Positions 53,789 through 53,947 of a DNA stretch of 64,000 nt are shown one piece after another. The notes under the pieces are model-generated. The model ran no database searches. It was not told the DNA's origin and saw nothing but the letters and a program-made list of their open reading frames with translations. How positions within the stretch are numbered: the first letter of the stretch is position 1; the number at the start of each line of letters is the position of its first letter. The stretch is from positions 6,133 through 70,132 of the forward strand of contig NW_021833740.1 in assembly GCF_006345805.1 (NCBI RefSeq), given 5' to 3'. Source of the stretch: Octopus sinensis. Its lineage: Eukaryota. A program made the translations under genes and the position numbers.

Positions 53789-53947
53789 TGTAGAGTGACT
53801 GTAGTGCTTGAATGTCATCAGCATGCACTGAAGTGCCATTGCATTCCATGATGTATGGCCACATTTGTGCTGAAATGCTCTCAGAGTGGAATAATCCTAA
53901 TGAGTGACCAATTTGGTGGATCGCTTGACACAGTAGACTGATCTGAC
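53789..53947 (-). CDS. MMP exon E: zinc-binding helix and Met-turn (QISLLCQAIHQIGHSLGLFHSESISAQMWPYIMEC...DDIQALQSLY)
   Basis: Acceptor ttttataaaag and donor GTAAGT; HxxGHxxGxxHS, Met-turn and DDIxxxQxLY motifs. Confidence 0.95.

What the first reader, a model, noticed from the sequence alone, without database searches (positions are those of the whole stretch)
53889..53921. MMP with catalytic Glu replaced by Gln: candidate natural pseudo-protease
Seen: the zinc motif is HQIGHSLGLFH (CAA at 53913-53915, one base from GAA). All three His ligands, the Met-turn, structural Zn/Ca motifs, cysteine switch, furin site and nine in-frame exons are intact, so the gene does not look decayed. Established: this Glu is the general base, and E-to-Q is a standard inactivating mutation (e.g. 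MMP-9 E402Q). A-to-I editing cannot convert CAA to GAA. Inference: a secreted, furin-processed, non-catalytic MMP acting as a substrate trap, TIMP decoy or matrix scaffold.
Basis: partly seen in the sequence, partly recalled or inferred. Interest (0 to 1): 0.75.

Follow-up and report, generated by a model that had tools for sequence, protein, structure and literature searches.

The report
Conserved catalytically dead cephalopod metalloproteinase
Octopus, argonaut, cuttlefish and a second ten-armed lineage all keep an otherwise intact, expressed matrix metalloproteinase gene whose catalytic glutamate is a glutamine, so it is very probably an old non-cutting protease relative that now works by binding rather than a sequencing error or decaying gene.

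Summary
On the minus strand, window 53918-53886 encodes HQIGHSLGLFH, and CAA (Gln) lies at 53915-53913. It sits in a nine-exon, GT-AG, in-frame matrix metalloproteinase (MMP) gene of Octopus sinensis; exon 1 lies beyond the scaffold end.

- **Not an error or pseudogene.** A second assembled O. sinensis copy, O. bimaculoides, O. vulgaris, Argonauta hians, two cuttlefish and a second decapodiform lineage all have HQIGHSLGLFH. Their codons switch between CAA and CAG. The decapodiform sequences come from RNA-seq assemblies.
- **Selection.** dN/dS is about 0.04 overall.
- **Polarity.** The closest relatives keep Glu: Lottia, Haliotis and an O. bimaculoides paralogue. Gln is therefore derived on the coleoid stem.
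- **Shifted constraint.** Other positions near-invariant in MMPs also drifted: the edge-strand Leu, the S1' wall Tyr, a helix-C Asp, and the Met-turn Met in one lineage. The hemopexin domain (83% identity octopus-cuttlefish) is far better conserved than the catalytic domain (52%). Eleven Glu-bearing MMP pairs show the reverse.

Best reading: a secreted, zinc-retaining pseudo-protease that acts mainly through its hemopexin domain. The substrate-trap and TIMP-decoy ideas are weakened because cleft residues vary within the clade. Residual slow proteolysis is not excluded. It is a new variant of a known kind; the analogues are ADAM7 and ACE3.

The parts
53913..53915 (-). CAA = Gln209 (numbering of the 572-aa window product) at the position of the catalytic general-base Glu of HExxH
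   Evidence: Glu in 64/64 other MMPs. Gln in all 16 cephalopod orthologue sequences.
53886..53918 (-). Zinc-binding motif HQIGHSLGLFH with all three His ligands kept
   Evidence: Identical to the engineered MMP-12 E219Q chains in PDB.
53789..53947 (-). Exon 5 of the window model (159 nt). It carries the active-site helix, the Met-turn AQMWPY (53853-53870), the extra Cys204 (TGT within 53928-53930) and Cys233 followed by an N-glycosylation sequon CNGT (53832-53843), and helix C DDIQALQSLY.
   Evidence: Cys-pair co-occurrence.
63441..63567 (-). Exon 1 of the window model (exon 2 of the full gene): start of the pro-domain (NYLIRYGYL..., PG_binding_1). The true first exon (Met and signal peptide) lies beyond the window and scaffold end.
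58646..58777 (-). Exon with the cysteine switch RCGVPD (58719-58736) and the furin-type site RRKRR (58659-58673)
   Evidence: Conserved in the orthologues.
57045..57145 (-). Exon: start of the mature catalytic domain
55466..55697 (-). Exon: core of the catalytic domain with the structural-zinc and calcium ligand block HGDGMPFDGPDGITAHAF (55560-55613) and GDIHFD (55512-55529). The substrate-binding edge strand is GITAHAF, with the family-invariant Leu replaced by Thr.
51630..51986 (-). Exon: long hinge predicted to be disordered, with a conserved aromatic motif TYPYWYRFSR (51760-51789) and the first hemopexin Cys (KYCDG 51682-51696)
50039..50196 (-). Exon: hemopexin blades I-II
48123..48270 (-). 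Exon: hemopexin blades II-III
46821..47125 (-). Last exon: hemopexin blades III-IV with the basic stretch KGKKSRQRKYEKKRIK (47058-47105), the closing Cys (WWFGC 46896-46910), the conserved acidic tail EIPHIRQPFEDKDDNGWDLELTK and the stop codon TAA

Best explanation
The window carries most of an Octopus sinensis gene for a secreted, furin-processable matrix metalloproteinase homologue. The first exon is cut off by the scaffold end.

The catalytic general-base Glu was replaced by Gln in the common ancestor of octopods and decapodiform cephalopods, and the Gln has been kept by selection ever since. The protein still folds as a pro-domain, a zinc/calcium catalytic domain, a hinge and a four-bladed hemopexin domain.

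It has most likely lost, or nearly lost, peptide-bond hydrolysis and works as a pseudo-protease. Its selected function is binding, carried mainly by the extremely conserved hemopexin domain. The zinc-containing 'catalytic' domain is kept as a structural or accessory module.

- **Shown:** the substitution, its conservation, expression in cuttlefish, purifying selection, the ancestral state Glu, and the shifted pattern of constraint.
- **Inferred:** loss of activity, secretion, and binding as the function.
- **Unknown:** the partner.
For: 1. **Sequence and gene model.**
2. **Conservation.** HQIGHSLGLFH is present in O. sinensis (two assembled copies), O. bimaculoides, O. vulgaris, Argonauta hians, Acanthosepion pharaonis, Sepia esculenta-type transcripts and a second decapodiform cluster.
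3. **Synonymous turnover of the Gln codon.** It is CAA in Octopus and the second decapodiform lineage, and CAG in Argonauta and the cuttlefish.
4. **Gene structure.** Ten exons of the same lengths, apart from exon 1 and the hinge exon, in O. bimaculoides and Argonauta.
5. **Transcripts.** Uninterrupted coding sequences sit on 2-3 kb RNA-seq contigs from many runs. One of these runs is Sepia esculenta juvenile RNA-seq (PMC9538352).
6. **Selection (Nei-Gojobori dN/dS).** O. sinensis vs O. bimaculoides: 0.044 overall, 0.080 catalytic, 0.026 hemopexin. The two cuttlefish: 0.038 overall, 0.125 catalytic, 0 hemopexin.
7. **Polarity.** The clade has 100% bootstrap support. It nests in a molluscan subfamily (75.5% support) whose other members carry Glu: Lottia, Haliotis and an O. 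bimaculoides paralogue.
8. **Erosion of catalysis-linked positions.** Four positions are 100% conserved in 64 other MMPs yet changed in this clade: E209 to Q in all four sequences; the edge-strand L162 to T or N in three of four; L238 to V or M; and D242 to H in the decapodiforms. Two further positions also changed: the 95%-conserved S1' wall Tyr230 to I or L, and the Met-turn Met to Leu in one lineage.
9. **Inverted domain constraint.** The catalytic-to-hemopexin identity ratio is 0.60-0.86 in five clade pairs. It is 0.99-1.94 in eleven Glu-bearing MMP pairs.
10. **Fold.** AlphaFold pLDDT is above 90 for both domains. The best full-length match is proMMP-1. The catalytic domain matches MMP-12, MMP-8 and MMP-13 at TM 0.9 and 1.7-2.0 Å.
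11. **Engineered E-to-Q MMPs** are the standard inactive forms.
Against: - No activity measurement exists.
- From memory and not checked here (Cha and Auld, Biochemistry 1997): matrilysin E198Q kept measurable activity, with kcat/Km lowered by a few hundred-fold. Gln therefore need not mean zero turnover.
- The three zinc His, the cysteine switch and the furin site are all conserved, and the catalytic domain is still under purifying selection (omega about 0.1). This would be expected if exposing the zinc site still matters.
- No expression data for Octopus itself were seen here.
- The signal peptide and secretion are inferred from the N-terminal hydrophobic stretch of the full-length orthologues only.
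- The binding partner of the hemopexin domain is unknown.
Confidence: 0.7

Rival explanations
1. Slow or specialised protease. The Gln variant still hydrolyses peptide bonds, at a low rate or on a special substrate, with zinc-bound water attacking without a carboxylate base. The gene would then be a functional enzyme with unusual kinetics.
For: All three zinc ligands, the structural Zn/Ca sites, the cysteine switch and the furin site are conserved across the clade. The catalytic domain has omega 0.08-0.125, well below 1. Residual activity of an E-to-Q MMP mutant has been reported (from memory, not verified here).
Against: The family-invariant substrate-binding positions are changed, and they vary between octopods and decapodiforms: the edge-strand Leu, the S1' wall Tyr, the helix-C Asp, and the Met-turn Met in one lineage. 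The catalytic domain is less conserved than the hemopexin domain, the opposite of all eleven Glu-bearing pairs tested. No conserved new acidic residue appears next to the motif.
Confidence: 0.15
2. Cleft-based binder. After pro-domain removal the zinc cleft binds substrates without cutting them (substrate trap) or soaks up TIMPs (decoy).
For: Conservation of the zinc site, cysteine switch and furin motif suggests that unmasking the cleft matters. Engineered E-to-Q MMPs do bind substrates and inhibitors; that is why they are crystallised.
Against: The cleft-lining residues are not conserved within the clade. Position 161 is I/I/A/S, 162 is T/L/T/N, 163 is A/A/S/S, 205 is Q/Q/L/L and 230 is I/I/L/L. 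A conserved ligand geometry is therefore unlikely. The strongest constraint lies in the hemopexin domain.
Confidence: 0.12
3. Artefact or decaying gene. The CAA would be a sequencing or assembly error, or the locus a recent pseudogene.
For: The window comes from an unplaced 70-kb scaffold, and the gene is truncated at its end.
Against: The chromosomal copy has the same CAA. Gln is present in at least seven further species or lineages, with synonymous codon changes. The reading frame and splice sites are intact. dN/dS is about 0.04. Transcripts exist.
Confidence: 0.01

Closest known systems
ADAM7 (M12 adamalysin pseudo-peptidase; motif HQLGHNLGMQHD, as listed in PMC11266112)
   Same: A metzincin in which only the general-base Glu is replaced by Gln, while the three zinc His and the Met-turn remain. 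It is a conserved, expressed protein with a non-proteolytic role.
   Different: It belongs to a different family (M12, membrane-anchored, with disintegrin and Cys-rich domains). Here the family is M10 matrixin with a hemopexin domain and no membrane anchor. The 2024 pseudo-peptidase review lists no M10/MMP member in the passages I retrieved.
ACE3 (mammalian ACE homologue, HQXXH) and Xenopus ADAM15 (HQXGH)
   Same: Natural E-to-Q replacements in the zincin motif, conserved across several species and interpreted as loss of catalysis (PMC1925091, PMC3055250).
   Different: Different zincin families and folds. ACE3 is a pseudogene in humans, whereas the cephalopod gene is under strong purifying selection in every lineage seen.
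Engineered inactive MMPs: MMP-12 E219Q (e.g. PDB 5i2z), proMMP-2 E404Q (PDB 1eak), MMP-9 E402Q
   Same: The same residue change in the same family. The MMP-12 mutant chain reads AVHQIGHSLGL, identical over the motif. 1eak appears among the fold matches.
   Different: Those are laboratory mutants of otherwise normal enzymes with canonical cleft residues. The cephalopod protein also changed the edge-strand Leu, the S1' wall Tyr and other near-invariant positions.
Molluscan Cys-pair MMP subfamily: Lottia gigantea XP_009053959, Haliotis MMP-14-like, Octopus bimaculoides XP_014785209
   Same: These are the closest homologues. They share the N-terminal NYLxRYGYL, the extra Cys four residues before the first zinc His, a second Cys in the S1' loop, and the same hemopexin and C-terminal layout.
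   Different: All of them keep HExxH. Their hemopexin domains are not more conserved than their catalytic domains.
Non-proteolytic functions of vertebrate MMP hemopexin domains (MMP-14, MMP-9, MMP-2 PEX; hemopexin and vitronectin as stand-alone relatives)
   Same: The hemopexin propeller acts as a ligand-binding or dimerisation module independent of catalysis (established knowledge, not tested here).
   Different: In vertebrates this sits alongside an active protease domain. Here the protease domain appears to be disabled in the germ line.

Membership tests
Matrixin / MMP (MEROPS M10A, Pfam PF00413 + PF00045) | Peptidase_M10 catalytic-domain homology and fold | tested here: met
   Pfam Peptidase_M10 E = 3.4e-45 over 158 of 159 profile positions. 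The AlphaFold catalytic domain matches MMP-12, MMP-8 and MMP-13 at TM 0.9 and 1.7-2.0 Å.
Matrixin / MMP (MEROPS M10A, Pfam PF00413 + PF00045) | Three zinc-binding His in HExxHxxGxxH | tested here: met
   H208, H212, H218 and G215 are present and invariant in the family alignment.
Matrixin / MMP (MEROPS M10A, Pfam PF00413 + PF00045) | Catalytic general-base Glu after the first His | tested here: not met
   Gln209 (CAA 53915-53913). Glu in 64/64 other aligned MMPs.
Matrixin / MMP (MEROPS M10A, Pfam PF00413 + PF00045) | Met-turn methionine | tested here: met
   AQMWPY in the window. The Met is replaced by Leu in the second decapodiform lineage.
Matrixin / MMP (MEROPS M10A, Pfam PF00413 + PF00045) | Cysteine-switch PRCGxPD in the pro-domain | tested here: met
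   KKRCGVPD at 58736-58719. R57 and C58 are invariant columns.
Matrixin / MMP (MEROPS M10A, Pfam PF00413 + PF00045) | Structural zinc and calcium ligand block (HGD...FDG...H...GD.HFD) | tested here: met
   HGDGMPFDGPDGITAHAF...GDIHFD aligns with the conserved columns. Metal binding itself was not tested.
Matrixin / MMP (MEROPS M10A, Pfam PF00413 + PF00045) | C-terminal four-bladed hemopexin domain closed by a Cys-Cys pair | tested here: met
   Pfam Hemopexin E = 2.1e-15. The model shows four beta blades at pLDDT about 90. Cys350 and Cys548 are present.
Matrixin / MMP (MEROPS M10A, Pfam PF00413 + PF00045) | Zinc-dependent endopeptidase activity | not testable with these tools
   Needs recombinant protein and an assay.
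Pseudo-peptidase (inactive homologue retained by selection) | Loss of a residue essential for catalysis | tested here: met
   E-to-Q at the general base.
Pseudo-peptidase (inactive homologue retained by selection) | Retention under purifying selection across species, with an intact frame and expression | tested here: met
   dN/dS 0.04. At least seven species or lineages. Transcripts.
Pseudo-peptidase (inactive homologue retained by selection) | Demonstrated absence of catalysis | not testable with these tools
   Inferred only from engineered E-to-Q mutants and from drift of the cleft residues.
Collagenase 3 (MMP-13) orthologue, as the database name 'collagenase 3-like' suggests | Specific orthology to vertebrate MMP-13 | tested here: not met
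   The PDB catalytic domains of MMP-8, MMP-12 and MMP-13 score alike. The tree places the gene in a mollusc-specific subfamily, away from the vertebrate sequences included. The name is an automatic label.
Furin-activated MMPs | R-X-K/R-R motif between the pro-domain and the catalytic domain | tested here: met
   RRKRR in Octopus and Argonauta, and RRQKR in the cuttlefish. The second decapodiform lineage has RTQKR, which lacks the P4 Arg. Cleavage itself was not tested.

The most novel reading that the evidence does not exclude
This may be the first natural, anciently conserved pseudo-enzyme lineage inside the matrix metalloproteinase family proper. It would be a coleoid-wide secreted protein that keeps zinc, the cysteine switch and furin processing, gave up hydrolysis, and moved its selected function to an ultra-conserved hemopexin propeller. 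Lophotrochozoans would have hit on the same E-to-Q route at least three separate times: cephalopods, the annelid Owenia, and a third lineage known only from transcripts.
Probability: 0.5. Interest if true: 0.65.

Novelty: new variant of a known kind. Interest (0 to 1): 0.55.

Why it matters
**For the MMP field.** MMPs are usually treated as enzymes first. Non-proteolytic roles of their hemopexin domains are debated, mostly from engineered E-to-A or E-to-Q mutants. This is a natural case in which evolution made the same mutation, kept the protein under strong selection across both coleoid superorders, and tightened constraint on the hemopexin domain. It offers a clean system for asking what an MMP scaffold does without catalysis.

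**For pseudo-enzyme surveys.** It would add the M10 family to the metallopeptidase families with known pseudo-enzymes. The 2024 review read here (PMC11266112) lists M1, M12, M13, M14 and M41 but no M10 member in the passages I retrieved.

**For annotation.** These genes are currently labelled 'collagenase 3-like' or 'MMP14' and would be counted as active proteases in cephalopod degradome or regeneration studies.

Tried and rejected
1. **Sequencing error or haplotype-specific variant.** Rejected: the chromosomal copy and all orthologues carry Gln.
2. **Pseudogene.** Rejected on dN/dS, intact splice sites and transcripts.
3. **Orthology to vertebrate MMP-13.** Rejected.
4. **Control with the Glu-bearing Octopus paralogue.** I searched for its decapodiform orthologues to compare domain constraint. 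None were found; its best non-Octopus hit is the Gln clade itself. I used eleven other Glu-bearing MMP pairs instead.
5. **Distance between the two extra Cys in the AlphaFold model.** The tool returns no coordinates, so the proposed disulfide rests on co-occurrence only.
6. **Chiton relative as a second 'dead' orthologue.** Its gene model lacks the zinc exon. The exon is present in the intron with HEFGH and an apparent frameshift, so an assembly error and a real loss cannot be told apart.
7. **Literature searches.** Searches for the accession numbers, for HQIGH or HQxxH in MMPs, and for the matrilysin E198Q kinetics found nothing on this gene and no open copy of the kinetics paper.
9. **Saturation.** dS between octopods and decapodiforms is saturated, so omega is quoted only for the close pairs.

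Full report
**1. The observation**

Read on the minus strand, window 53918-53886 is CAC CAA ATT GGT CAC TCA TTA GGA TTA TTC CAC = HQIGHSLGLFH.

The motif lies in a 159-nt exon (53789-53947). With eight other exons it forms one open frame of 572 codons ending in TAA at 46821-46823. Every exon is bounded by AG and GT.

Pfam finds three domains:
- Peptidase_M10, E = 3.4e-45 over 158 of 159 profile positions
- Hemopexin
- the pro-domain PG_binding_1

The following features are all present:
- cysteine switch (RCGVPD)
- a furin-type RRKRR
- the structural zinc/calcium block
- the Met-turn (AQMWPY)
- the two Cys that close the hemopexin propeller

**2. Where the window comes from**

The translated product is identical to a partial Octopus sinensis protein, XP_029656442.2, and to residues 114-685 of XP_029650943.1, 'collagenase 3-like'.

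The window is 100% identical to the end of the unplaced 70-kb scaffold VCDQ01003412.1. That explains why exon 1 (Met and signal peptide) is missing.

A chromosomal copy on CM016883.1 is 99.4% identical over 17.7 kb and has the same CAA. The two are most simply two haplotypes of one locus.

**3. Is the Gln real and conserved?**

Every orthologue found carries HQIGHSLGLFH:
- O. bimaculoides
- O. vulgaris
- Argonauta hians (76% identity)
- Acanthosepion pharaonis and matching transcripts
- a second cuttlefish cluster, seen in 119 blocks of RNA-seq assemblies
- a second decapodiform cluster (about 60% identity to Octopus)

One run holding the second cuttlefish sequence, SRR19578101, is Sepia esculenta juvenile RNA-seq (PMC9538352).

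The decapodiform coding sequences are uninterrupted on 2-3 kb contigs, so they are spliced transcripts.

| Lineage | Gln codon |
|---|---|
| O. sinensis, O. bimaculoides, second decapodiform lineage | CAA |
| Argonauta, both cuttlefish | CAG |

The codon changed synonymously while the residue stayed. O. bimaculoides and Argonauta have ten exons with the same lengths, except for exon 1 and the hinge exon.

**4. Selection**

Nei-Gojobori estimates for the two close pairs:

| Pair | dS | Whole gene | Catalytic | Hemopexin |
|---|---|---|---|---|
| O. sinensis vs O. bimaculoides | 0.12 | 0.044 | 0.080 | 0.026 |
| The two cuttlefish | 0.16 | 0.038 | 0.125 | 0 |

Between octopods and decapodiforms dS is saturated, so only amino-acid identities are meaningful there. 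Octopus versus cuttlefish gives:

| Region | Identity |
|---|---|
| Pro-domain | 57% |
| Catalytic domain | 52% |
| Hinge | 35% |
| Hemopexin domain | 83% |

**5. Polarity and relatives**

A search of 1.84 billion representative proteins gave 7,311 MMP homologues. The cephalopod clade stands far apart: 814 bits for the clade representative against 337 bits for the next hit.

The closest full-length relatives are:
- Lottia gigantea, motif LLCVAIHEFGH
- Haliotis, motif FCVGVHEIGH
- an O. bimaculoides paralogue, motif LLCTALHELGH, which shares the N-terminal WPRNxF..NYLIRYGYL

All three carry Glu.

In a neighbour-joining tree the Gln clade has 100% bootstrap support. It nests with these molluscan sequences at 75.5% support. 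Gln is therefore derived. The change happened after the split from the other molluscan lineages sampled and before octopods and decapodiforms diverged. Published molecular clocks put that divergence at a few hundred million years ago; this date is from memory.

Two other MMPs with HQxxH lie elsewhere in the tree and are independent events:
- Owenia fusiformis, HQFGH
- a transcript-only cluster, HQLGH

**6. What else changed**

Ninety-seven positions are at least 80% conserved in 64 other MMPs. Of these, 68 are kept in all four representatives of the clade.

The changed ones include four positions that are 100% conserved elsewhere:
- E209 (Q in all four)
- L162 of the substrate-binding edge strand 'LAHA' (T/L/T/N)
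- L238 (V or M)
- D242 in helix C (H in the decapodiforms)

Three further changes stand out:
- Y230 of the S1' wall, 95% conserved elsewhere, is I or L.
- A163 is S in the decapodiforms.
- M226 of the Met-turn is L in one lineage.

These cleft positions also differ between octopods and decapodiforms.

The ratio of catalytic-domain to hemopexin-domain identity is 0.60-0.86 in five pairs within the clade. It is 0.99-1.94 in eleven pairs of Glu-bearing MMPs at similar divergence. Constraint has thus moved away from the active-site cleft and towards the hemopexin propeller.

The metal ligands, the cysteine switch and the furin site remain, and the catalytic domain as a whole is still under purifying selection.

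**7. Structure**

AlphaFold with 68 aligned sequences gives pLDDT above 90 for the pro-domain helices, the catalytic domain and the four hemopexin blades. It predicts a disordered hinge (residues 256-342) and a disordered tail.

Foldseek finds full-length proMMP-1 (1su3) first. It superposes the catalytic domain on MMP-12, MMP-8 and MMP-13 at TM about 0.9 and 1.7-2.0 Å.

PDB sequence search shows that engineered MMP-12 E219Q chains carry the same HQIGHSLGL. A proMMP-2 E404Q entry is among the fold matches.

**8. Interpretation**

The best-supported reading is a secreted, zinc-retaining pseudo-protease that is retained for binding, mainly through the hemopexin domain.

The specific cleft-based modes (substrate trap, TIMP decoy) are weakened, because the cleft residues are neither canonical nor conserved within the clade.

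Residual slow proteolysis cannot be excluded. From memory, an E-to-Q matrilysin mutant kept measurable activity. The conserved cysteine switch, furin site and zinc ligands are not fully explained by a purely hemopexin-based function. I record this as an open point.

**9. Comparison with what is known**

Natural E-to-Q replacements with intact His ligands are described in three other zincins:
- ADAM7, HQLGH (PMC11266112)
- ACE3, HQXXH (PMC1925091)
- Xenopus ADAM15, HQXGH (PMC3055250)

The pseudo-metallopeptidase review lists no M10/MMP member in the tables and passages I retrieved. Searches for the motif and for the accession numbers found no paper on this gene.

It is therefore a new variant of a known kind. 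The phenomenon is familiar. Its occurrence in the matrixin family is, as far as I could find, undescribed, and so are its age and the inverted domain constraint.

**10. Verdict**

- **Observation:** confirmed.
- **Interpretation:** partly supported.
- **Interest:** 0.55. This is a clear and testable natural experiment for non-catalytic MMP function and a useful annotation correction. It is not a surprise in kind, because pseudo-enzymes occur in most enzyme families.

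Noticed in passing
window 53928-53930 (Cys204) and 53841-53843 (Cys233): There are two extra cysteines. One lies four residues before the first zinc His, at an S1' pocket wall position that is Leu in MMP-8. The other lies in the S1' loop and is followed by an N-glycosylation sequon. Among the motif instances in the 318 MMP sequences fetched, 23 have both Cys, 298 have neither and only 2 have one. This suggests a disulfide across the S1' pocket that defines a molluscan MMP subfamily (Lottia, Haliotis, Octopus paralogue, this clade). 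It predates the E-to-Q change. No coordinates were available to measure the distance.
   Followed up: partly
P0232 / P0098 (Octopus bimaculoides XP_014785209 / XP_014785210), not in the window: This is the closest Octopus paralogue. It keeps HELGH, has a degenerate hemopexin region and a long His/Lys-rich C-terminal tail. Its predicted isoform X2 skips exactly the zinc-motif exon (52 residues shorter in the product), which would be a splice route to a zinc-less product. No decapodiform orthologue was found.
   Followed up: partly
L014 about 6635-6830 (Liolophura sinensis, intron of XP_064613332): The chiton relative's gene model lacks the zinc-helix exon. The intron contains that exon (…[26 protein letters not shown]…) with an apparent frameshift before helix C (…LLAQDDIDGIQS…). 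This is either an assembly indel or a second, independent disabling of the catalytic domain.
   Followed up: partly
P0087 (Owenia fusiformis CAH1788450) and P0220/P0233-P0235 (RNA-seq contigs, organism unknown): These are two further MMP homologues with Gln in place of the catalytic Glu (HQFGH and HQLGH). They are unrelated to the cephalopod clade in the tree, so the same substitution seems to have arisen repeatedly.
   Followed up: partly
window 46321-64000 vs L015/L016: The window is the end of unplaced scaffold VCDQ01003412.1 of assembly GCA_006345805.1. A 99.4%-identical copy sits on chromosome record CM016883.1 at 5.87 Mb. This is probably an unmerged haplotig, which makes the gene appear twice in the annotation, once as 'partial'.
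   Followed up: yes
window 51760-51789, 47058-47105, 46824-46892: Three features are conserved across the clade and absent from ordinary MMPs: an aromatic hinge motif (PYWYR[FI]SR, plus D[RK][FY]WW upstream), a basic stretch in hemopexin blades III/IV (KGKKSRxxK...K.KIKLF), and an acidic C-terminal tail (PHIRQPFE..WDLEL[TN]K) after the last Cys. Their function is unknown.
   Followed up: no
P0004, P0078-P0081 (second decapodiform lineage): The Met-turn Met is replaced by Leu (AYLWPF). In all decapodiform sequences the otherwise 100%-conserved helix-C Asp is His (TPDHIEAL).
   Followed up: partly
window 23692-24924 (+): A 411-codon open frame has a reverse-transcriptase domain (RVT_1, E = 3.7e-32). 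The adjoining open frames at 23114-23539 and 24897-25543 had no Pfam match where tested. It looks like a LINE-type retrotransposon copy in the intergenic region.
   Followed up: partly
window about 6100-11600, both strands: About three tandem copies of a roughly 1.8-kb unit. The longest open frame is 8096-9472 on the minus strand (459 codons) and contains a CCHC-like 'CYKCGLRGHIRAFC' knuckle. It has no Pfam match.
   Followed up: no
window about 12010-12430, 16860-17265, 18555-18970, 57520-57945, 58165-58570: Several copies of a roughly 400-bp interspersed repeat at 82-90% identity, on both strands and including introns of the MMP gene. It is probably a SINE-like element.
   Followed up: no
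window 35120-36100, 40480-41430, 61890-62300: Long low-complexity tracts: a GGT/GGC-rich tract, a (TGTATG/TGCATG)-type tract and an AT-rich trinucleotide tract. They give long spurious open frames.
   Followed up: no
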